Shown here in pieces: positions 1 through 53,213 of a stretch of DNA of 64,000 nucleotides. The position numbers and the translations under genes are program-made. Location of the stretch: the IMG/VR virus record IMGVR_UViG_3300046660_000488, positions 372,001 through 436,000 of that record. One strand, given 5' to 3'. The notes beneath the pieces were generated by a model that searched no databases, had not been told where the DNA came from, and saw nothing but the letters and a program-made list of their open reading frames with translations. The number at the start of each line of letters is the position of its first letter. Position 1 is the stretch's first letter.

Positions 1-654
1 ATGGAAACCGTTGGCCTCTACGTCGGCTCGTTCGATCCGGTGACCCTTGGACACCTCGACATCGTCAGCAAAGCGATGAAGACCTTCGACAAGGTCATCG
101 TCGGCAAGGGCTTCAACCCGAAGAAAAAACAATCCCTCCTGCATCCGGGCGTCGCAGCGGCTATGATCGCCCACGCCGCCAGAGAAGCGCTTGGCGTCGA
201 ATTCGACACGCGAATCGCCAAGGGTGGTGAGATCGGCGAGGGCAAGGTCATCATCCGACATGACCGCAAGGACAAGCGATATCCCTCCACCGAGCAATAC
301 CCTCGCGAAAACCTGCATCCGGCCTACACGTCGCTGGACGGCCGCCTGCACATCGGTGTCTACGAGGACGACATTTCGGCCTACGCAAAGCGCATGGGCG
401 CCACCCATCTGGTGCGGGGCCTTCGGCAGGTCAGCGATTTCAACGACGAATTCACCCTGCACGGGGTGATGCGCGAGATTTCGCCTGAACTGATCCCGAT
501 CCACATCATCTGCGACGCCAAATTCCTGCACGTCTCGTCGAGCACGGTGCGTGAACTGGCCAAGCTCGGCTACAACGACAACCTCGACTGGCTGGTTACA
601 CCCACGGTCAAGGACATGGTGATCGACTGCACGGCGTCGGTGCTGCGCTGGTGA
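1..654 (+). CDS. coaD: phosphopantetheine adenylyltransferase with an internal insertion
   Basis: Motifs GSFDPVTLGH, LVRGLR..DF..E and VSSSTVRE; 217 aa against about 160 aa for a typical CoaD. Confidence 0.88.
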   Translation: METVGLYVGSFDPVTLGHLDIVSKAMKTFDKVIVGKGFNPKKKQSLLHPGVAAAMIAHAAREALGVEFDTRIAKGGEIGEGKVIIRHDRKDKRYPSTEQYPRENLHPAYTSLDGRLHIGVYEDDISAYAKRMGATHLVRGLRQVSDFNDEFTLHGVMREISPELIPIHIICDAKFLHVSSSTVRELAKLGYNDNLDWLVTPTVKDMVIDCTASVLRW

Positions 655-917
655 TCCATCGCGGCTTGCATACGCGAGAGCGGCAGGAGTCCAAGGGCTG
701 GAAGAGCATCGCGTGGTGCTCCACGCCGGTCTATGCCGGGACAACCATGGTTGGCCGGGACGTGGAAGGCGGTGGCTGGTTCCGCACTTTCCAGAAGGGT
801 GGCATGCTGTTCTACTACCACGGGGTCGATGACCACGGTGGCCCGTTCGACGGCGGACCCTGCAAAACCAGAGCCGCCGCCGCGCGGCTGGCGTCTCGCC
901 TGTTTATGAAAACTTGA
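651..917 (+). CDS. hypothetical protein
   Basis: Start overlaps the coaD stop (GTGA). Confidence 0.5.
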   Translation: MIHRGLHTRERQESKGWKSIAWCSTPVYAGTTMVGRDVEGGGWFRTFQKGGMLFYYHGVDDHGGPFDGGPCKTRAAAARLASRLFMKT

Positions 918-1134
918 CCACAAGCCTGATGCCATACTGATCGTCGGTCGGAGGATCGCGCATCAAGCTGATCCGCGCGTTGGTCGGCTTTTGGGGCGGC
1001 GGCAGGTTCGCCACGTGGCGCTGTATGGCTTTCGTGACGAATGCGACGACGTTGATGCCATAGTGACGCTCAGCGTCCTCAACGGCTTCGGATGTGATCT
1101 GGAACGTGACGCCGTCTACGGTGTGTGTTTGCAT
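904..1134 (-). CDS. small protein with a segment resembling the gp23 capsid P-domain
   Basis: AGGAG RBS; ITSEAVEDAERHYGINV resembles gp23 WTFEAAQDA..HGIDV. Confidence 0.55.
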   Translation of the reverse strand: MQTHTVDGVTFQITSEAVEDAERHYGINVVAFVTKAIQRHVANLPPPQKPTNARISLMRDPPTDDQYGIRLVVKFS

Positions 1135-1148
1135 GGTGCTCTCCTACG

Positions 1149-1173
1149 AAAAAGGGAGGGCCGAAGCCCTCCC
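1149..1173 (-). terminator. intrinsic terminator after thyX
   Basis: GGGAGGGC-TTCG-GCCCTCCC-TTTTT on the minus strand. Confidence 0.8.
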
Positions 1174-1178
1174 GATCC

Positions 1179-2276
1179 TTATTTCTTCTTCTTGGTCTTG
1201 CCGATTTGAACAGGCGGTGTCTGGGGCGCGGTGTTGACCAGCAACTCAACCGCCTTGGGAAGGATTTCTTCCTCAAGCCTCTTGCTGGCGGCGGCCATCG
1301 ACTTGGTCAGTTCGCCGTAGGCGGGAAGGCCCCATTGCGTCGCGAATTCGCGAAGCTCACGGGGCGACATTTCGTACTTGTCGGCGAAGGCCTTATCCGA
1401 GCCCGCTTCAAGAAGCGCGTCGGTCCACCAGACCTTCGGCGCGCTCGGGCACGCCAGCAGGGCCTTCAGCAGCGAAGTCTCCATCCGCGAGTTGTGGGTC
1501 GCTTGGCGGATGTAATCCTCGAAAGCCTGAACCGACTCGGGGAACAGCGGCTGGATCAGGTCATAGATCGCGTTGGCGACGTCGCGGATTTCCCGCTGAG
1601 CATGCGGGTCCATACGCAGACGCAGAAGGTGGAACAGGTTGTGGAGGTCTTGCTTCCAGTACAGTTCCGTGTAGTTGCCGGTCGGTAGGATCGTGCGGGC
1701 CAGTTCGCGAGCGATGCCGCCGAAATCGTCGCTCAGCAGCGGGTCGGCTGGATCATACGGATCGCACCAGACATCGCGCTTGTTTTCTCCGCGATCACCA
1801 AGCAGGGCCTTGTAGATGTCGTAGGACGTGCGATTGGCTTGCTCGATCATCCAACGAACGCCGGTCTTATCCTCGTCCGAGAGGTCACCGGAGCGGCCCT
1901 GTTTGTTGTCCTTGGACTGGGGCGCGATGTAATCGGGCTCGGGCATGTAGAATTCGTCGGTCATGACCGAGTAACGACCCGAGTACTCGTTCAGGCTGGC
2001 CGTGCGGTGACGGATCAGTTGGCGAGCAATGAAGATCGGGAGCTTGATGTGCAGCTTGACTTCGCACATTTCGAACGGCGAGGTGTGGTGGGCGCGCATC
2101 AGATAGCGGAGCAGGCCGCGATCTTCGCTGACCGACTTCGTGCCGTCGCCGTAGGAGGTCCGGGCCGCCTGCACGACGGCATAATCCGAGCCCATGTGGT
2201 CGATCAGCCCCACGAAGCCATGGTCGAGCACGGGGACGTACTTGGGGTCGTTGATAACGTCAGCTTGCTTCGTCAT
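1179..2276 (-). CDS. thyX: flavin-dependent thymidylate synthase
   Basis: ThyX motif RHRTASLNEYSGRY, plus HTSPFE and HAQREIR. Confidence 0.96.
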   Translation of the reverse strand: MTKQADVINDPKYVPVLDHGFVGLIDHMGSDYAVVQAARTSYGDGTKSVSEDRGLLRYLMRAHHTSPFEMCEVKLHIKLPIFIARQLIRHRTASLNEYSGRYSVMTDEFYMPEPDYIAPQSKDNKQGRSGDLSDEDKTGVRWMIEQANRTSYDIYKALLGDRGENKRDVWCDPYDPADPLLSDDFGGIARELARTILPTGNYTELYWKQDLHNLFHLLRLRMDPHAQREIRDVANAIYDLIQPLFPESVQAFEDYIRQATHNSRMETSLLKALLACPSAPKVWWTDALLEAGSDKAFADKYEMSPRELREFATQWGLPAYGELTKSMAAASKRLEEEILPKAVELLVNTAPQTPPVQIGKTKKKK

Positions 2277-2425
2277 GTGTTTTTGCTATGCTCTAAGTAT
2301 TGGATAAACAAATCGGGATACTCTTCGCCGGTGACACGGATGCCATTGCGGAAGAGATAAAATGCTTCCCTTGATACCAATCCCCGAAATTCGTCGCCAT
2401 TAATTTCGAGGACCGGGGTCAGCAC
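2273..2425 (-). CDS. hypothetical protein (start uncertain)
   Basis: Fills the gap in a minus-strand operon and overlaps the thyX start. Confidence 0.4.
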   Translation of the reverse strand: MLTPVLEINGDEFRGLVSREAFYLFRNGIRVTGEEYPDLFIQYLEHSKNT

Positions 2426-2441
2426 GATGTCGGCGACTCCG

Positions 2442-2741
2442 TCAGGTTTCCTCGCCACCGCAGTCCTCGCTGGAGTCGCATTCTGGCCATGGAACGTCCG
2501 CGCCGTCCTTGAACAGCCAGTTGAACTCGGAATAGCGGGTCTGTTTCTCACCGGCCGCCTTCAACAGGCTTTCACCAAGGGCGCGGGCGGCGTTGGTGGT
2601 CAGGCTGACCTTGGCGGTGACGTCGCCGCTGCGGACCTTCATCCAGACGTAATCGTCGGAAGCTTCGACCACGGCCACGGTTTGCCACGGCGCTGGGCCG
2701 CTGGAATAGAACTCGGCGATCTTGATTGCATCATCACTCAT
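2442..2741 (-). CDS. hypothetical protein
   Basis: Operon packing and codon usage. Confidence 0.65.
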   Translation of the reverse strand: MSDDAIKIAEFYSSGPAPWQTVAVVEASDDYVWMKVRSGDVTAKVSLTTNAARALGESLLKAAGEKQTRYSEFNWLFKDGADVPWPECDSSEDCGGEET

Positions 2742-2745
2742 GGGG

Positions 2746-2946
2746 TCACGCCTTCACGGGGAAGGGTTCGACGCGCCACTGCCACGTGCTGGCCACGGAG
2801 GTCTTGCCGTTGTTGATCATGCTGTTGACGTAGGCTCGGGCCGACGTCTCGTTGTCGTAGACCTCAACGATCTCGTACTTGGCGGCGCCGCCGACCACGT
2901 AGGTTTCGCGGGACACGATCCATGCGATTTGTCCGGCGAAACTCAT
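2746..2946 (-). CDS. hypothetical protein
   Basis: ATGA overlap with the upstream ORF. Confidence 0.6.
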   Translation of the reverse strand: MSFAGQIAWIVSRETYVVGGAAKYEIVEVYDNETSARAYVNSMINNGKTSVASTWQWRVEPFPVKA

Positions 2947-3131
2947 GCGGAGGCTCCCTTGACGCCCCACATCACGGCTTCTTCCAGCTTGGTGATGGCC
3001 AGCGCGTACTCACGGGACTTGGGCAGTCCGGCGAACAGGGCGATGAATTCTTCGCCTTGGTCCTTGATCTTGGCGATCAGGGCAATCTCGTCTTCCGTCA
3101 GTTGACGGTATTCTTTGCGTGTTGCTGTCAT
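2943..3131 (-). CDS. Acb2/Tad1-like cyclic-nucleotide sponge (anti-defence)
   Basis: YRQLTEDEIALIAKIKDQG is Acb2-like and SREYALAITKLEEAVMW is Tad1-like. Confidence 0.65.
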   Translation of the reverse strand: MTATRKEYRQLTEDEIALIAKIKDQGEEFIALFAGLPKSREYALAITKLEEAVMWGVKGASA

Positions 3132-3412
3132 TAGAAAATATCATTTGAGTTGGAAATCGCCGCAAAACGGCGCTCAGCTTCGTCGTCGCTGAGTTTGATG
3201 AACATGCAGAAGCGCTTCCACTCGGAAGCCAAGGTCGGATTGTCCGCGATGAGCTTCTGTAGCTCTTCCCAGTACTTCGCCTTTGTCTCGGCTAATTTGA
3301 TGCGATCCTGAAGACCGTCGATAATTTTCCCAAGTCTACTAACATCATCGTTCAATTTTGTAATGCAAGCAGCTTGTGCTTCGATCATACGCTGATCTGC
3401 GGTCCGATACAT
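3131..3412 (-). CDS. coiled-coil hypothetical protein
   Basis: Coupled to the next ORF; GAGGTG RBS. Confidence 0.65.
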   Translation of the reverse strand: MYRTADQRMIEAQAACITKLNDDVSRLGKIIDGLQDRIKLAETKAKYWEELQKLIADNPTLASEWKRFCMFIKLSDDEAERRFAAISNSNDIF

Positions 3413-3468
3413 AGAAAAACACCTCTGATACTACAAGAGTACCAGAGGTGGAAAGTATAGTCTATTTT

Positions 3469-3741
3469 TTAGCTGAGTTGTTTCTTGTGGTCGATCAGCT
3501 TGAACATTTCGCTGATCTTCACGTACATCGCATGACGGAGGCGGTCGGTATCGAGCTTGAGCCTCGCGGAACGAAGGCGGCGATCAGGCCCGGTCAAGAA
3601 ATCCTGAAGCTCTTGGCCCTTCAGGTAGGTCTTGTTGCCGCGCTCGTCTACGATCTCTGCCTCGATGATGTACTGAGGGTCGATTTCCTCTACATCAAGG
3701 TCTCTGATGATGTCGTTGATAAGCGCCGCTGGATTGATCAT
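3469..3741 (-). CDS. hypothetical protein (late)
   Basis: AAGGAG RBS; TAAATA at 3762-3767. Confidence 0.7.
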   Translation of the reverse strand: MINPAALINDIIRDLDVEEIDPQYIIEAEIVDERGNKTYLKGQELQDFLTGPDRRLRSARLKLDTDRLRHAMYVKISEMFKLIDHKKQLS

Positions 3742-3778
3742 GGGGTAATCTCCTTACTTGGTATTTACCCTATTCGGA

Positions 3779-4045
3779 CTAATTAAGCGATCCGTTTGTC
3801 TTCATGTGAGCAGCATGTTCAAGGGCTGCGAGGATCACCGCCGCAGCCTTGATCAGGTCTTCTTCAAACGCCTCAGCCTGTGGCTTAGTGTGCTTCCTCG
3901 AAGAGCCCCGAAGACAGTAACTTGCCGCAATGGCGAGCCAGTCATTCGGGGTATTCTTCGTGTCCCACTCCGAGCCGGGCAGGTTGAACTGACGCTCGCG
4001 CTCCGCGAGGATTTCAGCGATGATTTCCTCGCGGCGCGCGGTCAT
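3779..4045 (-). CDS. MazG-like all-alpha NTP pyrophosphatase-like protein
   Basis: Pattern EILAERERQ...NDW...EEDLIKAAAV..AALE. Confidence 0.55.
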   Translation of the reverse strand: MTARREEIIAEILAERERQFNLPGSEWDTKNTPNDWLAIAASYCLRGSSRKHTKPQAEAFEEDLIKAAAVILAALEHAAHMKTNGSLN

Positions 4046-4046
4046 C

Positions 4047-4877
4047 TTACTTCGACGCCTTGCGGGGGCGGGTCGCCTTCACCGGCACTTCCACGACAGC
4101 TTCGGCGGCCTTGCGGGTCCGAGTTGCCTTGGCGGGTGCGGATTGAGCCACCGGCGCGGTCTGGGCGACGCGCTTGGTCGGCGCCGCGCGTTCCGGCTGC
4201 GGACGCAGTTGGGGTGCGTACTCGTAGGCCTTCTCGCGCTTCTGCTGGGCGGCGAATTCCAGATCGGACGCTTCCATCAGCAGGTTGTTGGCGATGCCGA
4301 CCGCACGTTCGTTCACGCCAGCGCGTTGGTTCTGGGCGTGCGGGTTGAACTTGTCAGCTTCTTCGTACTGCTGGGCGCGGGCCTTGGGGGCGACTTGCGC
4401 GTACAGGCTACCGACCGGGTCGATCTCGGGTTCCGGCTCAGCGACGGGATAGCCCTCGAAGCCTTCGTAGATCGACATGGCGTCGCCGTTGTAGCTCGGG
4501 GCGACCGGCTCTTCGGGGATGTAACGGCCCATCTTCTCCAGCACTTCGCGGAGCGGGAAGCTGCGCGACGGAAGCGGGAGCATCGACACTTGGTCGATGT
4601 GGATGGGTTGCAGCAGGTTGTTGTGGTGCAGGAACTTCAGCACGCTCAGCGTGCCGTCCGGCATCATCCGGGCGTCCAGAACCGTACCGAGGTCGGTGGC
4701 GGCTTGGCCTTCGCGGCTTTGCAGGATTTGCATCATGTACTGCTGGAAGCGATCCGGCAGGCTGTCAGTGGAAACCACCAGAGCGTGGTCTTCGCGCTGG
4801 GGGATTTGCATGAAGATGACCGCGTAGCGCTGGTCAGTCCGGGCGTGGCGTGCGACGTGTCGCAGAGGTGTAGACAT
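4047..4877 (-). CDS. conserved jumbo-phage hypothetical protein with a basic tail
   Basis: Long ORF, GGAG RBS, typical codon usage. Confidence 0.75.
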   Translation of the reverse strand: MSTPLRHVARHARTDQRYAVIFMQIPQREDHALVVSTDSLPDRFQQYMMQILQSREGQAATDLGTVLDARMMPDGTLSVLKFLHHNNLLQPIHIDQVSMLPLPSRSFPLREVLEKMGRYIPEEPVAPSYNGDAMSIYEGFEGYPVAEPEPEIDPVGSLYAQVAPKARAQQYEEADKFNPHAQNQRAGVNERAVGIANNLLMEASDLEFAAQQKREKAYEYAPQLRPQPERAAPTKRVAQTAPVAQSAPAKATRTRKAAEAVVEVPVKATRPRKASK

Positions 4878-4901
4878 TGTTACTCCGTAATTGGGTAAAG
4901 T

Positions 4902-5156
4902 TTAGGCTTCCGGCGTTTCGTCGCCCGCAACCGTAGTTGCGGCTTCAGCGGCTTGCTGCGCTTCAACGTATTCGATGAAGTCGAGAAGACGGCGACGGTG
5001 ACGCTGGACTTGCTCGATGTTCGACCAACCCTTCAGTGCACCTTCCCCCACAAGATGATCAATGATCTGTAGGGAGTGCTTCATGTCCTGAAGCTCCAGC
5101 GAGGGAGCGACTTCTTCAGAATCGTCGAGGTGGTCGGTTTGAGCAATATCGGTCAT
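4902..5156 (-). CDS. hypothetical protein
   Basis: ORF downstream of the late motif at 5253-5258. Confidence 0.7.
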   Translation of the reverse strand: MTDIAQTDHLDDSEEVAPSLELQDMKHSLQIIDHLVGEGALKGWSNIEQVQRHRRRLLDFIEYVEAQQAAEAATTVAGDETPEA

Positions 5157-5355: not shown

Positions 5356-5940
5356 TCACGCCGCGAGGCGGATCACATTGTTCTTATTCTTCCGAGGCTT
5401 AACGATCACGTTGTCCTCCGGCCATGACAGGTACGGAACCCATGCGGCCTCGGGGATCGTGATCGGGAACTCCCGCCGCTTGGCCACAAGGTCGTAGTAC
5501 GACGGCTTGTAGGCGGGGAAATTCGGCCTGATCCTGACGTTGTTGCCCTTCTTGTTGTTGCAGGGCTTGCACGACGTGATCGCGTTCGTCCACGTGATCT
5601 GGCCGCCCAACGACTTGGGGAAGATGTGGTCGAGCGACAGCCGGTCCTCGTTCGTGAACTGCTCGTTGCAGTACGCGCACGTGTAGCGGTCACGCAGGAA
5701 GATGTTGTCCTTGTTGCAGACGACCTCACGCTCGAAGGGCTCGTAGCGCTTCTGCATGATGATCGACGGAACCATGAACTCCTGTGACGGAGTATGGACC
5801 ACCCAGTCCTCGTAGTACTCGACTACGTTGACCGATCCGACGTGGATGCAGCGCATCGCGTCTTGCCAGATCATAGTGGACAAAGGAAGGACGGTCGGCA
5901 GACCATCCGCTTGCAAGACTAGAACGTCCCCCGTTCTCAT
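5356..5940 (-). CDS. HNH endonuclease (McrA-like)
   Basis: RDRYTCAYC...SLDHIFPKSLGG..W.N...CKPCNNKKGN. Confidence 0.92.
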   Translation of the reverse strand: MRTGDVLVLQADGLPTVLPLSTMIWQDAMRCIHVGSVNVVEYYEDWVVHTPSQEFMVPSIIMQKRYEPFEREVVCNKDNIFLRDRYTCAYCNEQFTNEDRLSLDHIFPKSLGGQITWTNAITSCKPCNNKKGNNVRIRPNFPAYKPSYYDLVAKRREFPITIPEAAWVPYLSWPEDNVIVKPRKNKNNVIRLAA

Positions 5941-5995: not shown

Positions 5996-7219
5996 CTAAT
6001 GGCGGGTGAAATTCTCCAACTTGAGACCTTCTGGCGACCAGCGCAGATCAACGGACGACAGATAGCCGCCCTTACCGGCGCCCGTGTCCATAAACACGGC
6101 TTGCCCACCGGCTGCGTTGGTTTCAACGACCGGCTTAATCATCGAGCGTGCGTCATGGCCAACGAACACGGACATGTTCGAGGGAATGGCGTCGATCCAG
6201 CTATAGGTTCGGGGAGGACGATCAGGCCCTCCCAAACGTTGAGTGGGAGCGGCCGTCATATCGAACTCACCGAACAGGGAATACGTTTCCATGTTCTTGT
6301 GGTCCTGATCTGAGCCCCATGCGGACGGGTGAACCGCCGCGTGGGTAAAGTAGGTGTTATTTAGTCCCAAGCGATAAGGAGAACGAGCAACCAGCCCCCG
6401 GAACCTTGCCATCCATCGTTCCCGGCTGGCGGGACTGAGGTGAGAAAGCGCGGTTGTGGTAACCTTGTTACCTTCGCTTAATTTCATTATATGCCTCGAA
6501 CGCTCGGGTTGGTCAATCCATCGGGCGATCTTTCGCTCATGGTTTCCCAAAATTAGTTCCCCGTTTCCCCGCATCACGACCCGGTAAACCTCTTCCGCGC
6601 ATTCAATCGGCTGAGGCCCGTAGTCGATCACATCACCCAGAAAAATGATGAAGTGGCGGCGGTCACGCGCCCAGTCGATTGCCGAAAGCAAGGACTGGTA
6701 CATGCCGTGGATGTCGCCTATCACGGTGATTCCATTGAACCTTTCCTTGATAGACGCGATGTCGTTCGTCTTGAGTCGGTAAACCGGATCAACCACCGCC
6801 GCGCTCATATCGACCACGTTGGCAACTCCGTCACCCTTCATGAAATCCTTCGACGCTGACGTGAACCGTTGGCGAGCCACCGGATCGGCGTCAATGTCGT
6901 CGTACACCAGATAGAATACCGGAACACCGGAATTCACGCCGATATTGGTCAGCCCCATCCGGCCGTCCCTGCGGACGTTGGCGGCGCTGACCACCACGCG
7001 CTCACCCAGCCGAAGCTTGGTCTCCACCCGGCGGTGCAACTCGGAGAAGACGATGCCGTCGAGGTCTCGACGGTTCTCATCCCCCACCAGTTCATGCCGG
7101 ATAGCGTTGGCGCTGACGATCTCATAGTCGGGGAAAGCCTCCCGCACACGCGCGTCATTGTAGTGGGCGTTCGGACCCACGGTAATGACCAGCGAATGGA
7201 GTGGAATCAGTTTCCTCAT
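5996..7219 (-). CDS. Pnkp-like protein: degenerate kinase domain plus metallophosphoesterase
   Basis: Phosphoesterase motifs GDIHG, GDVIDYG, GNHE and GH; the N-terminal kinase-like domain lacks the P-loop GKS. Confidence 0.8.
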   Translation of the reverse strand: MRKLIPLHSLVITVGPNAHYNDARVREAFPDYEIVSANAIRHELVGDENRRDLDGIVFSELHRRVETKLRLGERVVVSAANVRRDGRMGLTNIGVNSGVPVFYLVYDDIDADPVARQRFTSASKDFMKGDGVANVVDMSAAVVDPVYRLKTNDIASIKERFNGITVIGDIHGMYQSLLSAIDWARDRRHFIIFLGDVIDYGPQPIECAEEVYRVVMRGNGELILGNHERKIARWIDQPERSRHIMKLSEGNKVTTTALSHLSPASRERWMARFRGLVARSPYRLGLNNTYFTHAAVHPSAWGSDQDHKNMETYSLFGEFDMTAAPTQRLGGPDRPPRTYSWIDAIPSNMSVFVGHDARSMIKPVVETNAAGGQAVFMDTGAGKGGYLSSVDLRWSPEGLKLENFTRH

Positions 7220-12275: not shown

Positions 12276-14555
12276 TTACACGTTGATAACCACGTTGTCA
12301 TCAACAATCGCGATGTTCGCATCGCCGCCGTTTTCCAGAGAACCGATCACGATCAACTTGGAAAGAGGCTTGGCGACATTGTCGGACAGGACGCGCTTGA
12401 GCGGTCGAGCGCCCATGAGCGGGTCGTAGCCCTTGTCGCCCAGCCAGTCCAAGGCCTCTTGCGTGAACGACAGATTGACGTTTCGCAGGGAGGCCATTTC
12501 CTGAAGCTGGCGAACGAACTTGGCCACGATGTGCAGCATGTTCGCCTTGTCCAGCCTGTCGAAGCGGATGTGGGCGTCCAGACGGTTCATGAACTCCGGG
12601 GTGAAGAACGCCTTGATCGCGGCGGTATCGCCGCCGACGTTCTCTTGCGATCCGAAACCGATCCGGTTCTTGGCCCGATCACGCGCCCCGGCATTCGAGG
12701 TCATGATCAGATGGATGTACCGGCAGTCGATGGTCTTGTTCGACGAGTCGGTGAACGAACCATTGTCCATGATCTGGAGGAAGATGTTCAGGACGTCCGG
12801 GTGAGCTTTCTCGATCTCATCCAGCAGCACCACGCAATGAGGCGTGTCGCTGACGCTCTGGGACAGCAGGCCAGCCTGATCCGAGTAGCCGACATAGCCG
12901 GGAGGGGCGCCGATCAGCCTGCTGACCGTGTGCTTCTCCATGTACTCGGACATGTCGATCCGGATGAGAGGCAGGTTGTAGACGTCCGCGAAGACCTTGG
13001 TGACTTCGGTCTTACCCACGCCGGTCGGGCCGGTGAACAGGTAGGCTCCAGCCGTCTTGTGGTTCTCACGCAGGCCAGCCTTGCTCAGGTAGATCGCGTC
13101 GATCAGGGCGGTGATCGCCGCTTCCTGCCCGAAGACGTTGGCGCGCATCTGCTCGTCGAGACGGATGATGCGTTCCTTGTCGCCCTCGGCCATTTTCTTC
13201 GGCGGGATTTTGGCGATCTGCTCAACTTCGGCCTCGATCTCTTCGACCGTGATCAGACCCTTGCGCTCGACACCTTCCTTCAGGACGTTCTGGGACGCGC
13301 CAGCGCAGTCGATCAGGTCGATGGCCTTGTCGGGCAGGAGCTTGCCGCTGATGTAACGGTGCGACAGGTCAACGGCCGCCACGAGGGCTTCGTCCGTGAA
13401 TTCGACGTTGTGGAAGGTCGAGTAATAGGGCGCGAGGCCGCGCAGGATGTCCTTGGCGTCGTCCAGCGACGGTTCGAACACATCCACCTTGCCGAATCGG
13501 CGAACGAGTGCCGTGTCCTTCTCGAAGTGCTTGTGGAACTCTGACGACGTCGTCGAGCCCATGCAGCGCAGCGTGCCCTTGGCCAGAGCAGGCTTCAGGA
13601 GGTTGGCCGCGTCCATCGTGCCGCTGTTGCCAGCCCCGGCGCCCATGATCATATGGATTTCGTCGATGAACAGGATCGACTTGGGCTTCAGTTCAAGGGC
13701 GTTGATGACTTGCTTCATCCGCTCTTCGAAATCACCGCGATAGCGAGCGCCAGCCACCAGAGCGGCCAGATCAAGCGCATAGACGGTCGAGTCCAGCAGG
13801 ATGGCCGGAACCTCGGAGCGAACGATCTTCAGGGCCAGACCTTCGGCGATGGCCGTCTTGCCAACACCCGGTTCACCCACCAGCAGCGGGTTGTTCTTCG
13901 TCCGGCGGGCGAGGATTTTGACGACGGAGTCCACTTCCTTCGTCCGGCCGATCAGCGGGTCGATGCTCTTGGTGTTGGCCCGCTCATTCAGGTTGACCGT
14001 GTAAAGCGCCAGAATGGAGTCGGCATCAGCTTCGGTCGTCGGCTTGGGCGGCGCCGTGGTCGGCTCGTCACCAGACATGATATGGCGTGCAAGACCGATG
14101 GTCGGCTTCTTGCCGTGCGACATGAAGCGCATCAGGGCCAGCGGATCGACGCCGAACTTTTGCAGGATCACGACCGCGTAACTGTCCTCCATCTTGGAGC
14201 CAGCCAGTTGCAGCAGGACATCCAGAGGGGTGACGTCAGGATCGGTGTGGGCGGCCTTCTTGCCGGTCGCGTTGAACACCAGTTCATTGGCGCGCGGGCT
14301 CGGCTCCGGCTCTTCGTCGCTGGCAGGAATGAGGCCTTCGGAGTAGAACGACTCCAACTCTTCCTGAATGCCCTCGACGTCGATCTTCATCCCTTCAAGG
14401 GCGGAGACCACATCTTCCTGCTCCAGAAGCGACGACAGCAGGTGTTCGAGGGTGATGAAAGCATGTCTGCGTTCGGTGGCGATTCGTCTAGCCCGAAGAA
14501 ACATCGCGGCTGTACGCTCAGTTTGAGCGCTATTCTCAGGCAAATCACTCATCAA
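12276..14555 (-). CDS. clpA: ATP-dependent Clp protease ATP-binding subunit ClpA
   Basis: Two AAA+ modules ([16 protein letters not shown]), [12 protein letters not shown], an IGF ClpP-docking loop and no ClpB middle domain. Confidence 0.95.
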
Positions 14556-23435: not shown

Positions 23436-26400
23436 ATGGCCATTTCAGATTCTGACAAGATTGATTTCCTCTGGAAGAAGGTTATCTTTGGTGTTACCAA
23501 GACGGCGTCGGGCACCATCAAGCTCGGCTCGAACGAAAGCGTCACGTCGCCGTTCCCCGTCGATCCGGATAACATCTGGAGCGAAGCCAGCCTGATTCCG
23601 GACACGCCGCCGACTTCGACGACCGCTCAGGTCCGTCGTTATTTCGGTGTGACCCGCGTTCACATGACGGTGGACCCGACCTCGCCGCCTAACCAGACTT
23701 GGTTCGCGACGTCGGCCTATCCGGACATCACCAGCCGCCTGACGGATTTCATCAATCCGGGCATCTTCGGCGCTGGCTATCTGGTTCAAGCCTTCATCGG
23801 CGACCCGAACACGGGTCCGGCCGCTCGTATCTTCCCTGACGCTGCTGGCGAAGAATTCGTCTTCGACTATGCGGCCGGTGTCCTGAACTTCGTCAATGCT
23901 GTCCCGGCATCGCGCGCGGCGACCGTTGGCCAAGGCACGGTCTCGGTTTCTGGCAACGGCATCTACATCCAAGCCTACCGTTACGTCGGCGCCAAGGGCG
24001 GCGGCGGTTCGGGTGGTGGCTCGGGCTTCGTCGCCAAGGCTGGCGACACCATGACCGGAACGCTGGCGTTCAACGGCATCGACGACGCTCTCTTCCTGAA
24101 GGAAGACGCTGCGAACGGCACGCAATGGGGTGCTGGCGTGGTTGGCACGGACCTGCGCGTCTTCGCCGCCGACATCGCTAACTCGGCCATCAGCTTTGGT
24201 CACCGCGCCGCCAACACCGGCGTCTTCCGCGAAGACCTCCGCATCGACGCAAACGGCGTTGTGACGGTCGGTGGAGCCGACGACGGCTTCGTCACGACCA
24301 ACGACGGCAACCGCATCGTTCTGGGCCACGTGGATGCCAACGGCTTCGTCACTGAGAACATGGTCATCGAGGCCAACGGCGTCGTCTACATCGACGGCTA
24401 CATGGTCTACCACGAAGGCAACCTGAACCTGAACGGTGGCCTGACCCCGTCTGGTGTGTCGCCGGGCGCCTACACCAACGCCAACATCACGGTTGACGTC
24501 TACGGCCGCGTCACAGTCGCCGCCAACGGCACGGGCGGTGGTGGTTCCTCGGGCACGGTCACGTCGGTTGCGGCAACGGGATCGGCTGACATCGCCGTCA
24601 CTGGTTCGCCGATCACCACGGCTGGTACGCTTGCCTTCGCTCTGTCCAACACGGCGGTCACACCGGGCACGTATACGAAGGTCACGGTTGACGCCAAGGG
24701 CCGCGCCACGGCTGGCACGAACCTGAGCAGCAGCGACGTCACCACGGCGCTGGGCTTCACTCCGCTCCAGACGGTCACCAACGCAGCCGTCGTCTCGGCG
24801 CTCGGCTATCAGCCGCTGGCGACCAACCAGACGATCACGGTCACGGGCGACGCTACGGGCTCGGGCGCTACTTCGATTGCCCTGACCCTCGCCAACACCG
24901 GCGTCGCTGCTTCGACCTACTCGCTCCCCACGGTCACCGTGGACAGCAAGGGGCGCGTCATCAACATCCAGAACGGCTCGGCTGTCACCAGCGTGGGCGT
25001 CACCGGTTCGGCCGACATCACGGCGACCGGCGGACCGATCACGTCGGCTGGCTCGATCTCTCTGGCCCTGTCCGACAAGCTGGGTGTAACGCCGGGCACG
25101 TACAGCCTGACCACGATCACCGTTGACCAGAAGGGCCGCATCACTGCGATCTCGAACGGTTCGGCCGGTGGTACTGGCACGGTCACGTCGGTCGGCCTGA
25201 CCGGCTCCCCGGCCATCACGGTCACGGGCTCGACGATCACCACGAGCGGTTCGTTCGCGGTCGATCTGTCGAACACGGGCGTCACGGCCCAGACCTACAC
25301 CAATCCCGTCGTCACGGTCGATGTGAAGGGTCGCGTCACTGCGATTTCGAACGGCTCGGCTGGCGGCACGGGAACTGTCACCTCGGTTGGAGCCACGGGT
25401 TCGGCCGACATCACCGTGGGTGGTGGTCCGATCACCAACTCGGGCACGCTGACCTTTGCTCTGTCGAACACGACGGTTTCGCCGGGCGTCTTCACCAAGG
25501 TCACGGTCGATGCCAAGGGCCGCGTAACGACGGGCGCGTTTCTGTCGAGCGCCGACGTCACCACGGCGCTGGGCTTCACACCGATCTCGACCAACCAGTC
25601 GATCACCGTCTCTGGTGACGCCACCGGTTCGGGCACAACGGCGATCACTCTGGCTCTGGCCAACACGGGCGTAACGGCTCAAACCTACGTCAACCCGACC
25701 ATCACGGTCGATGCCAAGGGCCGTGTCCTGACCGCTTCGAACGGAACGGGTTCGGCTGGCACGGTCACGTCGGTTGCTGCTACCGGCACGGCTGACATCA
25801 CGGTCACCGGTTCGCCGATCACGACGACCGGAACTTTGGCTTTCGCGCTGTCCAACACGGCGGTCACGCCGGGCACGTACACGAAGGTCACCGTGGACGC
25901 CAAGGGTCGCGCGACTGCTGGCGCCCAACTGACCAACACCGACGTCACCACGGCTCTGGGCTTCACTCCGCTGTCCACCGTCACCAACGCGGCCGTCGTC
26001 TCGGCTCTGGGCTATCAACCGCTCCAGCACAACGAAGCGATCACGGCTTCGGGAGACGTCACGGGTTCGGGTACGACGGCGATTGCACTGACGCTGGCCA
26101 ACTCGGGTGTCACGGCTGGATCGTACACCAACGCCAACATCACGGTTGACGCCAAAGGCCGCGTGACTGCGGTCGCCAACGGCGTGGCTGGTGGTGGCGG
26201 CGGTGGTTCGGTTTCGGTCAGCAAGGGTGGCACGCAAGTCGTAGCCACGGCCACCAACCTCAACTTCACGGGTAACAGCGTGACGGTGACGGACGGCGGC
26301 GCTGGCGTGGCCAACATCGCAGTCGATGACCGCGTCGAGTACGTCTACTTCCAATACACCTCGGGCAACGGCGGCACGTTCGCGAACAACACCGATTGCA

Positions 26401-26720
26401 TTCTGGCCAAGACCAGCGGCGTCACGGTCACCATCCTCGACGGAACCAACTCCATCGTGAAGTTCACCTTCACGGGTCGTCCGTTCCCGCCGGGTGGTAT
26501 TGCCGTCATGGGTCAAGCGTATTCGACCAACGAGTTCCTGTACAAGAACGTCGATGGCACGTTCGCTACCAGCAAGATCACCGGCGGCGGCACGGCGGCT
26601 GCTCCGACGTTCTTCGGTACGTTCTCCGAATACACGATCCAGCTTCGCATGACCGACACCGGCACTTCGGGCGCTGGTCTGGGCCAACGCGCGCGCGCTG
26701 CAATCATCTTCAAGTTCTAA
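23436..26720 (+). CDS. long tail-fibre-like protein B with repeated TVDAKGRVT modules
   Basis: KAGDTMTG motif and many GTYTKVTVDAKGR fibre repeats. Confidence 0.8.
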   Translation: MAISDSDKIDFLWKKVIFGVTKTASGTIKLGSNESVTSPFPVDPDNIWSEASLIPDTPPTSTTAQVRRYFGVTRVHMTVDPTSPPNQTWFATSAYPDITSRLTDFINPGIFGAGYLVQAFIGDPNTGPAARIFPDAAGEEFVFDYAAGVLNFVNAVPASRAATVGQGTVSVSGNGIYIQAYRYVGAKGGGGSGGGSGFVAKAGDTMTGTLAFNGIDDALFLKEDAANGTQWGAGVVGTDLRVFAADIANSAISFGHRAANTGVFREDLRIDANGVVTVGGADDGFVTTNDGNRIVLGHVDANGFVTENMVIEANGVVYIDGYMVYHEGNLNLNGGLTPSGVSPGAYTNANITVDVYGRVTVAANGTGGGGSSGTVTSVAATGSADIAVTGSPITTAGTLAFALSNTAVTPGTYTKVTVDAKGRATAGTNLSSSDVTTALGFTPLQTVTNAAVVSALGYQPLATNQTITVTGDATGSGATSIALTLANTGVAASTYSLPTVTVDSKGRVINIQNGSAVTSVGVTGSADITATGGPITSAGSISLALSDKLGVTPGTYSLTTITVDQKGRITAISNGSAGGTGTVTSVGLTGSPAITVTGSTITTSGSFAVDLSNTGVTAQTYTNPVVTVDVKGRVTAISNGSAGGTGTVTSVGATGSADITVGGGPITNSGTLTFALSNTTVSPGVFTKVTVDAKGRVTTGAFLSSADVTTALGFTPISTNQSITVSGDATGSGTTAITLALANTGVTAQTYVNPTITVDAKGRVLTASNGTGSAGTVTSVAATGTADITVTGSPITTTGTLAFALSNTAVTPGTYTKVTVDAKGRATAGAQLTNTDVTTALGFTPLSTVTNAAVVSALGYQPLQHNEAITASGDVTGSGTTAIALTLANSGVTAGSYTNANITVDAKGRVTAVANGVAGGGGGGSVSVSKGGTQVVATATNLNFTGNSVTVTDGGAGVANIAVDDRVEYVYFQYTSGNGGTFANNTDCILAKTSGVTVTILDGTNSIVKFTFTGRPFPPGGIAVMGQAYSTNEFLYKNVDGTFATSKITGGGTAAAPTFFGTFSEYTIQLRMTDTGTSGAGLGQRARAAIIFKF
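24440..26190 (+). repeat. imperfect tandem repeats encoding fibre modules
   Basis: Recurring GTVTSVAATG.ADITVTG.PITT.GTL.FALSNT.VTPG.YTKVTVDAKGR units. Confidence 0.85.
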
Positions 26721-26729
26721 GGAAAATCC

Positions 26730-28700
26730 ATGCGTTACGTCGATCTCCCCGCAAAAGTCCTTTCCGGAAGCGTATCTGCCATCACTGGTCTCGGTGCTTG
26801 GCCGTACGACGACGGGACGGGCGACCCGTTCTGGGTGGGGGGATCGACGCCCAAGGACTACCGCTGGCGGATGACCATGACGGTCGTCAATCAACAGCAC
26901 TCCAGCTACAAGACCCGTCGTCCTTATTACTACACTGGTATGGATGTCTCGGTTGGTGATTACGTCGCCGACCGTGAAGAAGGCATCTGCGTCAAGGTCA
27001 CTGCTGTTATCAGCAAGACGGATACGTCGGTCGTCTGTGAAGTTGAAGACGTTCTGCGCTACAATACGTTCCGTTTCCAAGGCGGAACGGGTGTCGGCAT
27101 TTTCCGTATCCCTTCGGAAGTCATCGTTTTCTCGCTGAACGAAGAAGGCCTCCCGGTCGTCGATCCGGTCCCCACGGTCGGCGTCGGTCCCAATTTCTTC
27201 CCCAACGTCATGTCCCGCTTCCAGAACATCGAGGCGGACGCCAATTTCCCGTTGGCCAAGGACAATCACGGATTTGAGCAGAACGACCTGATCTCTGCTG
27301 ATCCGAACAATAACACCTTCGTAAAGACCGACAGTGGCCACCCATACATTGTCGGCACGGTGTCGTTCAACGGCGCTGGCCCAAACACCTTCTTCATCAA
27401 CCCGATCCAGAAGGTCTTGGACAACATGGACTCGCTGATCGGCGACGTTGGTGAGGTCATCTACGCTGACCCAAACGTCGCTGGTGGATACTCCACGGTC
27501 GGCACTGTTCCGGTCATGATCAAGCTGCGGAACAACACGCAGTCGCAAACGGTGGGATCGGTGTTCGGCCCCACGTCCCCGGCCGGAACCGCCTTCAAGC
27601 TGAACGGCGTGCTGGTGACGATGTCGGCTGGAACGCTGACGGAATGCCAAAGCCTGATCAACAACACGACGGCCACGCACGGCATCGTCGCCTCCACTAT
27701 CTCGTCTCCCGTGGTCGCCCAGTCCAACCCGGCTGACTGCGTGAATGGCGAACCGGCTTTCCTGTCCACTGGTGCTCAGGCAACGATCAACGGTGTACTC
27801 GTCACCTTCAACACCACGACTGTAGGTCAGGCGACCTATGGTTCGGCCTATGCGCTTGAAGAAGACATGGCCACGGACATCAACGCGGCCAATATCCCCA
27901 ATGTCGTCGCCACGACGGCAGGCAATAAGCTGGTCCTGACCAACTCGGCTGGCGGGTCGATCACGATTGTCAACGTCGCGGCGGACACCGGCGGCAACCA
28001 GTTCGCTGGCCCGGCTTCCGCGTCTGGCGTTCCTTTGGCCACGACGTCTGGTGCTGGCGGCTCGGCCCTGAAGCTGACGGCGCCGGATGCTCGCGCCATC
28101 GACATCTACGACCAGACGGGCACGTTCTCGGAAGATTTCGGCATCGTGAGCGCAGAGAACGGCACGAAGGCCGCCGCGCTCTATATCGAGCAGGGCATTC
28201 GCGAAGCCTCGACTTATGTGGTCGCCAACATTCCGGCACGTGACGCGCTGGACGCGACGTTCGGTGACCAGTGCTTTGTTCAGGACGCCGGTAATGGCGA
28301 GTGGGCTCATTACATCCGCACGCTCGACAACTCGTGGGTCAAGCTCTCGGATGCTGACTCGTCAGTCACGGACGCTCAGTCGGTTGAAATCGAAGTCGAG
28401 TTCAACAGTGCGACAAACGGTCTCATCCACACGATCTCGTCGGGCCGCCGCGTCAGTTTCGTGACCGTCACCGTAGTCACGCCGTTCAACGGCACGGCTC
28501 CGACCATCGCTGTGGGCGACGCTGGAAGCAACTCGCGCCTGATGACTGCGGATCAGAACGATCTGACCACCATCGCAGATTACTCAACTACACCCAGCTA
28601 TACCTATAGTAATTCAGGGTCGGATACCGACATTGAGTATTACTTTGACCCCGGAAACTCTACTTCCGGAAAAGCTGTCATTGCAATCACTTATACCTAA
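26730..28700 (+). CDS. virion structural protein C
   Basis: AAGGA RBS; C-terminal domain shared with 40239-41318. Confidence 0.7.
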   Translation: MRYVDLPAKVLSGSVSAITGLGAWPYDDGTGDPFWVGGSTPKDYRWRMTMTVVNQQHSSYKTRRPYYYTGMDVSVGDYVADREEGICVKVTAVISKTDTSVVCEVEDVLRYNTFRFQGGTGVGIFRIPSEVIVFSLNEEGLPVVDPVPTVGVGPNFFPNVMSRFQNIEADANFPLAKDNHGFEQNDLISADPNNNTFVKTDSGHPYIVGTVSFNGAGPNTFFINPIQKVLDNMDSLIGDVGEVIYADPNVAGGYSTVGTVPVMIKLRNNTQSQTVGSVFGPTSPAGTAFKLNGVLVTMSAGTLTECQSLINNTTATHGIVASTISSPVVAQSNPADCVNGEPAFLSTGAQATINGVLVTFNTTTVGQATYGSAYALEEDMATDINAANIPNVVATTAGNKLVLTNSAGGSITIVNVAADTGGNQFAGPASASGVPLATTSGAGGSALKLTAPDARAIDIYDQTGTFSEDFGIVSAENGTKAAALYIEQGIREASTYVVANIPARDALDATFGDQCFVQDAGNGEWAHYIRTLDNSWVKLSDADSSVTDAQSVEIEVEFNSATNGLIHTISSGRRVSFVTVTVVTPFNGTAPTIAVGDAGSNSRLMTADQNDLTTIADYSTTPSYTYSNSGSDTDIEYYFDPGNSTSGKAVIAITYT

Positions 28701-32956: not shown

Positions 32957-33238
32957 ATGGATTATCAGTCCATGGCAATCGGACTTATCACAATTTGGCT
33001 GGGTGTGGCGGCGTGGCTTTGGGTCCACTGCAAGCTGACGCTCGACGACGCCGAAAATGTGGAAGATGTCCCCCAGCGCTCAATTCCCGGTGCGCTGCTG
33101 TGGCCGTGGTTCTTTTTGATTTCATTGACCAATTTTTTCATCACGTGGTCTTCGGCCCTCGTGAACCATTTCAAGGCGAAGCTATATGACGAACACGGTG
33201 CAGATCATCGAAGCCCTCGAAGCGACGACGAAACGTAA
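32957..33238 (+). CDS. small membrane protein
   Basis: Two hydrophobic segments with ALLWPWF. Confidence 0.55.
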   Translation: MDYQSMAIGLITIWLGVAAWLWVHCKLTLDDAENVEDVPQRSIPGALLWPWFFLISLTNFFITWSSALVNHFKAKLYDEHGADHRSPRSDDET

Positions 33239-53152: not shown

Positions 53153-53181
53153 GCTTCGGCTCCTTAGTACCTCCGAGAAGG

Positions 53182-53213
53182 AAGGGCGGCTCCACATTGG
53201 GGCCGCCCTTTTT
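53182..53213 (+). terminator. intrinsic terminator
   Basis: AAGGGCGGC...GCCGCCCTTTTT. Confidence 0.85.

What the first reader, a model, noticed from the sequence alone, without database searches (positions are those of the whole stretch)
2943..3131. Minimal 62-aa Acb2/Tad1-like sponge
The N-terminal YRQLTEDEIALIAKIKDQG recalls Acb2 (YRDLSQEEIDMMNRVKELG) and the C-terminal SREYALAITKLEEAVMW recalls Tad1 (SRENACALTHVEEALMW). Both reference sequences are quoted from memory. Established: both proteins sequester CBASS or Thoeris signalling nucleotides. Inference: a compact helical-hairpin sponge with possibly different ligand specificity.
Basis: partly seen in the sequence, partly recalled or inferred. 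Interest (0 to 1): 0.65.

Follow-up and report, generated by a model that had tools for sequence, protein, structure and literature searches.

The report
Short Acb2-family phage sponge gene
A 62-residue gene in a 578-kb phage genome is a genuine but ordinary member of the Acb2 family of phage 'sponge' proteins that soak up bacterial immune signalling nucleotides; equally short members have already been tested in the laboratory.

Summary
The ORF is real: window 2943..3131, minus strand, 62 aa. It is translationally coupled to both neighbours, and its frame is open for only 65 codons. It matches Pfam PF24729 (Acb2/Tad1 hairpin domain) at 68.9 bits (cut-off 27, E 4e-19). It folds with confidence (pLDDT 93) into a two-helix hairpin. 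It keeps the equivalents of the published Acb2 pocket residues: Y8/L11/K23 (cyclic-dinucleotide pocket) and R40/A43/L44/T47 (cA3 pocket). A two-copy model passes the controls (0.84 against 0.00). The novelty is not. Hadary et al. 2025 collected 9,141 Acb2 homologs and tested 44. Seven of those are 65 aa or shorter (down to 50 aa), and six of the seven block CBASS and/or type I Thoeris. In IMG/VR the ORF falls in a populated clade of 61-85 aa proteins with the same loop and tail lengths. The most likely function is a hexameric sponge for CBASS cyclic dinucleotides; cA3 or 3'cADPR binding is possible. Nothing supports a Tad1-type protein or a new specificity. Ligand binding and the hexamer are inferred, not shown. 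Verdict: new member of a known kind, low interest. The one unusual point is its host genome, a 578-kb phage.

The parts
2943..3131 (-). CDS of the 62-aa Acb2-family protein (stop codon TGA at 2945..2943 included)
   Evidence: ORF list and translation. Pfam PF24729 at 68.9 bits, E 4.1e-19. It is the only copy in the 578-kb genome, and the frame is open for only 65 codons.
3039..3095 (-). Helix 1 (residues 13-31); carries K23 and part of the predicted dimer interface
   Evidence: AlphaFold2 model with pLDDT 93.2, H13-31. Interface residues 18-33.
2949..3014 (-). Helix 2 (residues 40-61) with the family motif R-E-x-x-L-A-x-T-K-L-E-E-A-V-M-W; core of the predicted homodimer interface
   Evidence: Model H40-61. 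Lowest-error contacts are W55 with E41/L44/A45/K48 of the other copy. Motif conservation.
3108..3110 (-). Codon of Tyr8, equivalent to Acb2 Y11 (stacks on the base of the cyclic dinucleotide)
   Evidence: Aligned to Y11 of JBD67 Acb2 by MAFFT and hhalign and to PaMx33 chain position 11. The role of Y11 is from PMC10312549 and Hadary 2025. Tyr in 18 of 24 clade members.
3063..3065 (-). Codon of Lys23, equivalent to Acb2 K26 (salt bridge to the dinucleotide phosphate)
   Evidence: Alignments. Role. Lys in 22 of 24 clade members.
3012..3014 (-). Codon of Arg40, equivalent to PaMx33 Acb2 R67 (cA3 pocket)
   Evidence: Aligned to JBD67 R82, which is PaMx33 R67 after the 15-residue offset. The structural alignment puts model residue 62 at PaMx33 residue 89, which gives the same register. 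Role. Arg in 22 of 24.
2991..2993 (-). Codon of Thr47, equivalent to PaMx33 Acb2 T74 (cA3 pocket)
   Evidence: Same alignments. Role. Thr in 20 of 24.
3131..3412 (-). Upstream 93-aa ORF of unknown function; its TAA stop overlaps the ATG of the acb2-like gene (context, probably co-translated)
   Evidence: No Pfam or PHROG family.
2746..2946 (-). Downstream 66-aa ORF of unknown function (ATG at 2946, ATGA overlap with the acb2-like stop) (context)
   Evidence: No Pfam or PHROG family.
3420..3450 (-). Terminator-like hairpin (13 pairs plus a T run) just upstream of the 93-aa ORF; probable upstream boundary of the transcription unit
   Evidence: Pattern scan: 12 sites found against 6.6 +/- 2.5 in shuffles. 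This is a consensus match only.
1154..1173 (-). Terminator-like hairpin just after thyX (1179..2276, minus strand); probable downstream end of the unit that holds the acb2-like gene
   Evidence: ThyX by Pfam PF02511, E 1e-51.

Best explanation
The ORF encodes a hairpin-only member of the Acb2 family of phage anti-defence sponges. Each 62-residue chain is two long antiparallel helices. Two chains pair through the conserved helix-2 motif (T-K-L-E-E-A-V-M-W, centred on W55). By analogy with the solved Acb2 and Acb2_43 hexamers, three such pairs would build a triangular prism. At each of its three vertices, the N-terminal segments of two chains would form a pocket. There Tyr8 (with Leu11) would stack on the bases of a cyclic dinucleotide and Lys23 would hold its phosphates. 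The phage would make the protein during infection to mop up the CBASS second messenger (3'3'-cGAMP or 3'3'-cUA type), so the CBASS effector is never switched on. Arg40, Ala43, Leu44 and Thr47 match the residues that line the threefold cA3 pocket of PaMx33 Acb2, so trinucleotide binding is possible but much less certain. Shown here: the ORF, family membership, the predicted hairpin, conservation of the pocket residues, and an in-silico homodimer. Inferred: the hexamer, ligand binding, and the anti-CBASS role. My probabilities: family member 0.97; binds some immune nucleotide signal 0.8; binds cyclic dinucleotides 0.65; also binds cA3 0.3.
For: Pfam PF24729 at 68.9 bits against a cut-off of 27, reproduced at 67.9 bits in the genome scan, in a virus record. 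AlphaFold2 gives pLDDT 93.2 with helices 13-31 and 40-61. Of 350,542 PDB chains, Foldseek ranks T4 Vs.4 with cGAMP (TMq 0.76, prob 1.00) and PaMx33 Acb2 with cGAMP (TMq 0.75, prob 0.99) on top. VIA-align gives Z 7.1 (rmsd 3.2 A over 60 residues) and Z 6.7 (rmsd 2.3 A over 59). MAFFT and hhalign (E 4.1e-5, prob 70%) against JBD67 Acb2 place Y8=Y11, L11=L14, K23=K26, R40=R67, A43=A70, L44=I71 and T47=T74 in PaMx33 numbering. The roles of these residues come from mutagenesis and structures (PMC10312549; Hadary 2025). In the ORF's own clade (n=24), Y8 is kept in 18, L11 in 21, K23 in 22, R40 in 22 and T47 in 20. The two-copy model scores 0.84 (runs 0.83, 0.87, 0.84) against a best control of 0.00 among 3 controls. 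That mark was reached by 20 of 30 proteins solved as pairs and by 1 of 23 solved as single chains. The runs agree in at least 97% of contacts, and the partner's pLDDT is at least 88. Experimental precedent, by my reading of Table S2: 33 of 44 tested Acb2 homologs inhibit at least one CBASS system, and 6 of the 7 that are 65 aa or shorter are active. The three tested homologs with the same Y-x14-K helix 1 (#13, #18, #26) all inhibit both the cGAMP and the cUA CBASS systems (signals).
Against: There is no binding, oligomer or infection data for this protein. In the dimer job the ligand was not scored, and the N-terminal Tyr segment was not among the confident contacts; the pass may also reflect memory of solved Acb2 complexes. 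The fold match alone does not discriminate: an unrelated Esx hairpin ties at Z 7.0, and no Foldseek E-value is below 0.3. The protein lacks the insert between the helices (about 38 residues in JBD67) and ends one residue before the P90 contact of PaMx33 Acb2. Nine of the 44 tested homologs inhibited nothing. Specificity in this family is hard to read from sequence. Homolog #13 also inhibits type I Thoeris. Having R67 and T74 is not enough for cA3 binding: T4 Acb2 D61R still fails, because helix geometry matters. The host is unknown, so it is also unknown whether it uses CBASS.
Confidence: 0.68

Rival explanations
1. It is an Acb2-family sponge whose main target is the type I Thoeris signal 3'cADPR, as for Acb2_43, instead of or in addition to CBASS dinucleotides.
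For: [quoted passage not shown] One of them is #13, whose core most resembles this ORF by eye, and another is the 62-aa #31. With the family profile, Acb2_43 (PDB 9ptq) is the second-best PDB sequence match (E 7e-4).
Against: Acb2_43 binds 3'cADPR through an N-terminal beta-strand (T4, H5, L6, V7) and has no Tyr at the Y11 position. This ORF instead has the Y-R-x-L plus K signature of the dinucleotide binders. Its N-terminal segment before Tyr8 is only 7 residues long and is modelled without a strand.
Confidence: 0.15
2. It is a true family member that binds none of the signals known so far. It is either inactive or specific for an as yet unknown host nucleotide signal.
For: Nine of 44 tested homologs, including the 60-aa #22, inhibited none of the seven systems. 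The host of this 578-kb phage and its defence repertoire are unknown.
Against: The residues needed for dinucleotide binding are all present and are conserved in the clade. The three tested homologs with the same helix-1 signature were all active.
Confidence: 0.13
3. It is the remnant of a Tad1-type gene that lost its N-terminal gcADPR-binding domain, or it is a generic helical-hairpin protein unrelated to sponges.
For: Single-sequence and profile searches of the PDB rank Tad1 chains first, through the shared helix-2 motif. Helical hairpins are common, and unrelated ones tie in Z-score.
Against: Helix 1 carries the Acb2-specific Y-x14-K signature, which aligns with Acb2 and not with Tad1. Structural overlap with Tad1 is poor (TMq 0.31), against 0.75-0.76 for Acb2 and Vs.4. 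The frame is tightly bounded and coupled to its neighbours, and the upstream ORF has no family match. Dozens of intact relatives have the same length and ends. The Pfam score is 2.5 times the cut-off.
Confidence: 0.03

Closest known systems
Hairpin-only Acb2 homologs tested by Hadary et al. 2025 (bioRxiv 10.1101/2025.08.24.671296), especially #13 (80 aa), #18 (68 aa) and #26 (74 aa), and the very short #8 and #31 (62 aa) and #28 (50 aa)
   Same: Same Pfam family and the same two-helix architecture, with no long insert. #13, #18 and #26 share the Y-[RK]-x-L...K helix-1 signature, and their helix-2 motifs are close variants (ALEESVMW, NLEQAIMW, NLQHGIM). The sizes bracket this ORF. All come from phage or metagenomic viral contigs.
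   Different: These are different sequences. I compared them by eye only, because the table's sequences have no tool reference. This ORF has a shorter N-terminal lead (7 residues before the Tyr) than #13 and sits in a 578-kb phage. None of their activities has been measured for this protein.
Pseudomonas phage PaMx33 / JBD67 Acb2 (PDB 8H2J, 8H2X; Huiting et al. 2023, cited in PMC10312549; the preprint PMC10312549 itself)
   Same: Y11/L14/K26 and R67/A70/I71/T74 all have identical or conservative equivalents (Y8/L11/K23, R40/A43/L44/T47). The hairpin superposes at Z 6.7, rmsd 2.3 A over 59 residues.
   Different: Compared with JBD67, this ORF lacks about 38 residues between the two conserved helices; by the numbering offset that is about 23 in PaMx33, which is my inference. 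It stops one residue before P90, which contacts the cGAMP adenine in PaMx33 Acb2. Over the 59 aligned columns, hhalign reports 36% identity between the A3 profile (this ORF is its first sequence) and JBD67 Acb2.
T4 Vs.4 (Acb2 of phage T4, PDB 7UQ2)
   Same: Best structural match: Foldseek TMq 0.76 and prob 1.00, VIA Z 7.1. It is a cGAMP sponge.
   Different: It is 89 aa with extra elements. T4 Acb2 has Asp in place of R67 and does not bind cA3, whereas this ORF keeps the Arg.
Acb2_43 (PDB 9PTQ), a 3'cADPR-binding Acb2 homolog
   Same: Two-helix core and hexamer-forming family. It is the second-best PDB sequence match to the family profile (E 7e-4), and the Lys on helix 1 (K19) is retained.
   Different: Acb2_43 has added beta-strands at both ends and no Tyr at the stacking position. 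It binds 3'cADPR and does not inhibit CBASS.
Tad1 (Thoeris anti-defense 1; PDB 7UAV, 8KBB and others)
   Same: It shares the C-terminal hairpin with the S/C-R-E-N-A-x-A-x-T-x-x-E-E-x-x-M-W motif, hence the joint Pfam domain.
   Different: Tad1 is 98-148 aa in the tested panel and has an N-terminal domain that forms the gcADPR pocket (sizes; pocket from my own knowledge of the Tad1 structures). This ORF has no room for that domain. Structural overlap is only TMq 0.31.

Membership tests
Acb2 family (Pfam PF24729, Acb2/Tad1 hairpin domain) | Sequence profile match above the curated gathering score | tested here: met
   68.9 bits against 27, E 4.1e-19, profile positions 2-55 of 58; 67.9 bits in the genome scan.
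Acb2 family (Pfam PF24729, Acb2/Tad1 hairpin domain) | Core of two long antiparallel helices | tested here: met
   AlphaFold2 pLDDT 93.2, helices 13-31 and 40-61. Top structural matches are Vs.4 and Acb2, although unrelated hairpins score alike.
Acb2 family (Pfam PF24729, Acb2/Tad1 hairpin domain) | Cyclic-dinucleotide pocket residues (PaMx33 Y11 and K26, plus L14) | tested here: met
   Y8, K23 and L11 align to them and are conserved in the clade. Presence of the residues is shown; binding is not.
Acb2 family (Pfam PF24729, Acb2/Tad1 hairpin domain) | Cyclic-trinucleotide pocket (PaMx33 R67 and T74, plus A70 and I71, and a kinked helix) | tested here: inconclusive
   R40, T47, A43 and L44 are present. 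But these residues alone do not give cA3 binding in T4 or CHI14 Acb2, and helix geometry matters. The threefold pocket could not be modelled.
Acb2 family (Pfam PF24729, Acb2/Tad1 hairpin domain) | Homo-hexamer (triangular prism) | tested here: inconclusive
   The two-copy model passes: 0.84 against a best control of 0.00; the mark was reached by 20 of 30 solved pairs and 1 of 23 single chains. The hexamer is inferred by homology.
Acb2 family (Pfam PF24729, Acb2/Tad1 hairpin domain) | Sequesters, without cleaving, a nucleotide immune signal and rescues phage from CBASS or Thoeris | not testable with these tools
   This needs ITC or gel shift and plaque assays.
Acb2 family (Pfam PF24729, Acb2/Tad1 hairpin domain) | Encoded by a phage or prophage | tested here: met
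   The window lies in an IMG/VR virus record of 578,292 bp with direct terminal repeats, estimated 100% complete. Relatives lie in phage contigs.
PaMx33-type (canonical, about 94 aa) Acb2 architecture | Extra segment between the two conserved helices, and a C-terminal Pro (P90) closing the dinucleotide pocket | tested here: not met
   The insert is absent and the protein ends at the position of PaMx33 residue 89. This is not a family-defining feature: Acb2_43 and many tested homologs lack it too.
Tad1 family | N-terminal domain that forms the gcADPR pocket, ahead of the hairpin | tested here: not met
   The protein has 62 residues in all, with only 7 before the Acb2-type Tyr. The frame is open for just 65 codons. 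The upstream ORF has no family match. TMq to Tad1 is 0.31.
Tad1 family | C-terminal hairpin with the R-E-N-A...T...E-E-A-x-M-W motif | tested here: met
   HMMER alignments to Tad1 chains over residues 23-56.

The most novel reading that the evidence does not exclude
This bare 62-residue hairpin, lacking both the inter-helix insert and the P90 cap of canonical Acb2, still assembles into a hexamer with both pocket types. It would then sequester cyclic dinucleotides and cA3 together, perhaps also 3'cADPR as its relative #13 does. That would define the minimal structural unit of a multi-signal sponge, here used by a 578-kb phage.
Probability: 0.2. Interest if true: 0.4.

Novelty: new member of a known kind. 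Interest (0 to 1): 0.2.

Why it matters
It adds one more annotated anti-defence gene, this time in a very large (578-kb) phage. It suggests that the unknown host, or hosts the phage met in the past, use cyclic-nucleotide immune signalling such as CBASS. As a clean hairpin-only Acb2 that keeps both sets of pocket residues, it would be a convenient small construct for asking how much of Acb2 is needed for each pocket. It would not change current understanding: short Acb2 homologs are already catalogued in the thousands and tested by the dozen. A practical gain is that the unannotated small ORFs coupled to it become reasonable candidates for further anti-defence genes.

Tried and rejected
1. Megablast of window 1-12000 against the phage collection found no match, so no close sequenced relative is available there.
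2. A single-sequence phmmer search of the PDB gave only weak hits (E 0.25-1.2). It was useful for residue register but not as evidence.
3. Foldseek gave no hit with E <= 0.001, and VIA Z-scores tie with unrelated Esx, Rop-like and designed hairpins. I therefore do not use the fold as independent proof of membership.
I did not substitute a near-identical homolog to get round the rule.
5. My first impression from alignment A1 was that the ORF lacks a C-terminal tail. That holds only against one subgroup (the 81-94 aa forms ending NPYPSSKDP...GLKF). Against canonical Pseudomonas Acb2, the difference is a missing insert between the helices.
6. The invariance of K-L-E-E-A-V-M in my IMG/VR sample is not evidence, because that peptide was the recruiting pattern.
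7. A Tad2-family (PF11195) search of the genome found nothing.
8. Neighbouring small ORFs have no functional Pfam or PHROG assignment.
9. The large representative-protein search was not run. The family scans had settled the identity, and the operators had flagged its cost.
10. Table S1 of Hadary et al. was not searched for this exact protein.
11. The sequences in Table S2 have no tool reference, so I compared them by eye only and did not align them.

Full report
**1. The observation**

Window 2943..3131 holds a 62-codon ORF on the minus strand.

The gene call is firm.
- The frame is open for only 65 codons from stop to stop, and the ATG at 3131 is the first start in it.
- That ATG overlaps the TAA of the upstream 93-aa ORF (TAATG).
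- The ORF's own TGA overlaps the ATG of a downstream 66-aa ORF (ATGA).
- This tight coupling is typical of a phage operon of small genes.

- The Tad1 string appears exactly in the HMMER alignments to PDB Tad1 chains.
- The PaMx33 Acb2 string is covered by the Y11A and K26A primers printed in PMC10312549.

**2. What it is**

Pfam assigns the protein to PF24729, the Acb2/Tad1 hairpin domain. The score is 68.9 bits against a curated cut-off of 27 (E 4.1e-19), and the match covers profile positions 2-55 of 58. PHROGs gives only families of unknown function.

The window is part of an IMG/VR virus record of 578,292 bp with direct terminal repeats, estimated 100% complete. This is the only PF24729 copy in it.

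AlphaFold2, run with a 66-sequence alignment, gives a confident two-helix hairpin: pLDDT 93.2, helices 13-31 and 40-61.

Structural comparison agrees with the family but cannot prove membership.
- Foldseek ranks T4 Vs.4 with cGAMP (TMq 0.76) and PaMx33 Acb2 with cGAMP (TMq 0.75) first among 350,542 chains. Tad1 scores far lower (TMq 0.31).
- VIA-align gives Z 7.1 and Z 6.7 for the Acb2-family chains, but an unrelated Esx hairpin ties at Z 7.0.
- Membership therefore rests on the sequence profile.

**3. Anatomy compared with characterised Acb2 proteins**

I fetched JBD67 acb2 using the coordinates given in PMC10312549. MAFFT and hhalign (E 4.1e-5) agree on the alignment. JBD67 has Y11 and K26 at exactly the published positions. 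Its R82, T89 and P105 correspond to PaMx33 R67, T74 and P90, because its insert is 15 residues longer. The structural alignment puts model residue 62 at PaMx33 residue 89, which confirms the register.

| This ORF | PaMx33 Acb2 | Published role |
|---|---|---|
| Y8 | Y11 | dinucleotide pocket, stacks on the base |
| L11 | L14 | dinucleotide pocket, hydrophobic contact |
| K23 | K26 | dinucleotide pocket, salt bridge |
| R40 | R67 | cA3 pocket |
| A43 | A70 | cA3 pocket |
| L44 | I71 | cA3 pocket |
| T47 | T74 | cA3 pocket |

Two things are missing. One is an insert between the two conserved helices, about 38 residues long in JBD67. The other is the C-terminal Pro: the chain ends one residue before P90, which contacts the cGAMP adenine in PaMx33 Acb2.

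The mutagenesis behind these roles is as follows.
- Y11A and K26A abolish dinucleotide binding.
- R67A abolishes cA3 binding and T74A weakens it.
- Having the R67 and T74 residues is not sufficient: T4 Acb2 D61R still does not bind cA3, because helix geometry matters.

**4. Is "minimal" unusual? No**

Hadary et al. 2025 collected 9,141 Acb2 homologs, 4,204 of them non-redundant. Their Table S2 lists 44 tested Acb2 proteins. The counts below are my own reading of that table. My parse reproduces the paper's stated figure of ten type I Thoeris inhibitors.
- Seven tested proteins are 65 aa or shorter: 50, 60, 62, 62, 64, 64 and 65 aa.
- Six of those seven inhibit CBASS and/or type I Thoeris.
- Overall, 35 of 44 inhibit at least one system and 33 of 44 inhibit at least one CBASS system.

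The word search of 5.8 billion proteins found 9 relatives. They include a 98%-identical 62-aa protein and 63-aa and 69-aa proteins. A scan of IMG/VR found 117 relatives, of which 80 loci were kept. Extracting their ORFs shows three subgroups.
- The ORF belongs to a clade of 24 sequences that end W-[AG]-V-K-G-x-T-x.
- In this clade the modal gap between the helix-1 Lys and the helix-2 Arg is 16 residues, the tail after the Trp is 7 residues, and lengths run 61-92 aa (median 72). These lengths are upper bounds, because the longest ORF was taken.
- The ORF has exactly those modal values.
- Conservation of the pocket residues in the clade: Y8 in 18 of 24, L11 in 21, K23 in 22, R40 in 22, T47 in 20.
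- The invariance of K-L-E-E-A-V-M in this sample is an artefact of the recruiting pattern and is not used as evidence.

The three tested homologs with the same helix-1 signature (#13, #18, #26) all inhibit both the cGAMP-producing E. albertii CBASS and the cUA-producing Y. aleksiciae CBASS. #13 also inhibits type I Thoeris.

**5. Self-association**

A two-copy co-fold with 3'3'-cGAMP riding along scored 0.84 (three runs: 0.83, 0.87, 0.84). The best of three controls scored 0.00.
- That mark was reached by 20 of 30 proteins solved as pairs and by 1 of 23 solved as single chains.
- The runs agree in at least 97% of contacts, and the partner's pLDDT is at least 88.
- The interface is symmetric, with helix 2 against helix 2. 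W55 packs on E41, L44, A45 and K48 of the other copy.
- This offers a reason why the helix-2 motif is the most conserved part of the whole Acb2/Tad1 superfamily: it is the assembly core.

Several limits apply.
- The ligand was not scored.
- The Tyr8 segment is not among the confident contacts.
- The pass may reflect the model's memory of solved Acb2 complexes.

My geometric inference is this. An antiparallel dimer puts its two N-termini at opposite ends. Three such dimers forming the sides of a triangular prism would bring two N-termini together at each of three vertices. That is where the solved hexamers bind their ligands.

**6. Context**

The gene sits in a run of small minus-strand ORFs with no functional family assignment.
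- Terminator-like hairpins on the minus strand at 3450..3420 and 1173..1154 bracket the run.
- If those hairpins are real, the gene shares a transcription unit with thyX (1179..2276; PF02511, E 1e-51).
- Further upstream on the minus strand, beyond the 3450..3420 hairpin, lie an HNH endonuclease gene and a NinI-like phosphatase gene.
- The genome has no Tad2-family gene.

In smaller phages, Acb2-type genes lie inside or next to the structural module.
- In JBD67 the gene lies between the major head and adaptor genes.
- In Sinorhizobium phage Aussie it lies between the adaptor and stopper genes.
- One relative lies just upstream of terminase and portal genes.
- Another lies among baseplate genes.

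Here the gene instead lies next to nucleotide-metabolism genes.

**7. Verdict**

The most likely mechanism is a hexameric sponge for CBASS cyclic dinucleotides. cA3 and/or 3'cADPR binding remain open possibilities. Nothing points to a new ligand or a new architecture, because equally small relatives have already been catalogued and tested. This is a new member of a known kind, and interest is low (0.2). The main curiosity is that its carrier is a 578-kb phage.

Noticed in passing
whole window (G000:C1:372001-436000): The window belongs to a virus record of 578,292 bp with direct terminal repeats, estimated 100% complete. That puts it among very large phage genomes. GC is 57-62% across the window, and there are no tRNA genes in these 64 kb. 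Megablast of the first 12 kb finds no relative in the GenBank phage collection.
   Followed up: partly
window 12276..14555 (-): A 759-aa ClpB/ClpA-like double AAA+ chaperone encoded by the phage: Clp_N, AAA, AAA_lid_9, AAA_2 and ClpB_D2-small domains, best E 7.7e-56.
   Followed up: no
window 33186..34568 (+); 1..654 (+); 36976..38496 (-): An ATP-dependent DNA ligase (PF01068 plus the OB domain), a cytidylyltransferase-like nucleotidyltransferase (PF01467, E 1.8e-12) and a TPR-repeat protein. Several very long ORFs have no Pfam match: 23445..28310 (-) of 1,621 aa, 28798..32175 (+) of 1,125 aa and 50213..53197 (-) of 994 aa.
   Followed up: no
window 904..5156 (-): Small, tightly packed minus-strand ORFs lie around the acb2-like gene: 76, 99, 66, 93, 90, 88, 276 and 84 aa. 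None has a functional family assignment. Anti-defence genes tend to cluster, so these are candidates for further counter-defence proteins, above all the two that are translationally coupled to the acb2-like gene (2746..2946 and 3131..3412).
   Followed up: partly
window 1179..2276 (-), 5356..5940 (-), 5996..7219 (-): Flavin-dependent thymidylate synthase ThyX (PF02511, E 1e-51), an HNH endonuclease (PF14279/PF01844) and a 407-aa NinI-like Ser/Thr phosphatase/phosphoesterase (phrog_246, E 3e-40) flank the small-ORF cluster.
   Followed up: partly
L002 (JBD67), L003 (Sinorhizobium phage Aussie), L086, L088: In smaller phages the Acb2-type gene lies inside or beside the virion-structure module: major head to adaptor, adaptor to stopper, baseplate/PAAR, or just upstream of terminase and portal. 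In the 578-kb phage it lies among nucleotide-metabolism genes. This may reflect different expression timing.
   Followed up: no
L005 (HQ332136.1 / NC_023841.1, 'Dunaliella viridis virus SI2'): A record labelled as a virus of a green alga is classified as Caudoviricetes and encodes a 76-aa Acb2-type protein that is 47% identical to this ORF. That suggests its true host is a bacterium living with the alga.
   Followed up: no
L006-L085 (IMG/VR loci): The PF24729 relatives split into three sequence subgroups with different N-terminal signatures: Y-R-x-L...K (this ORF's clade); F-x-Y-H-x-P...R, 67-70 aa and the most numerous here; and E-I-V-A-N-K-Q-L-R-K-D with a 25-37 aa C-terminal extension ending G-L-K-[FL]. 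The second subgroup replaces the helix-1 Lys with Arg and Leu11 with Pro, which may go with a different pocket chemistry.
   Followed up: partly
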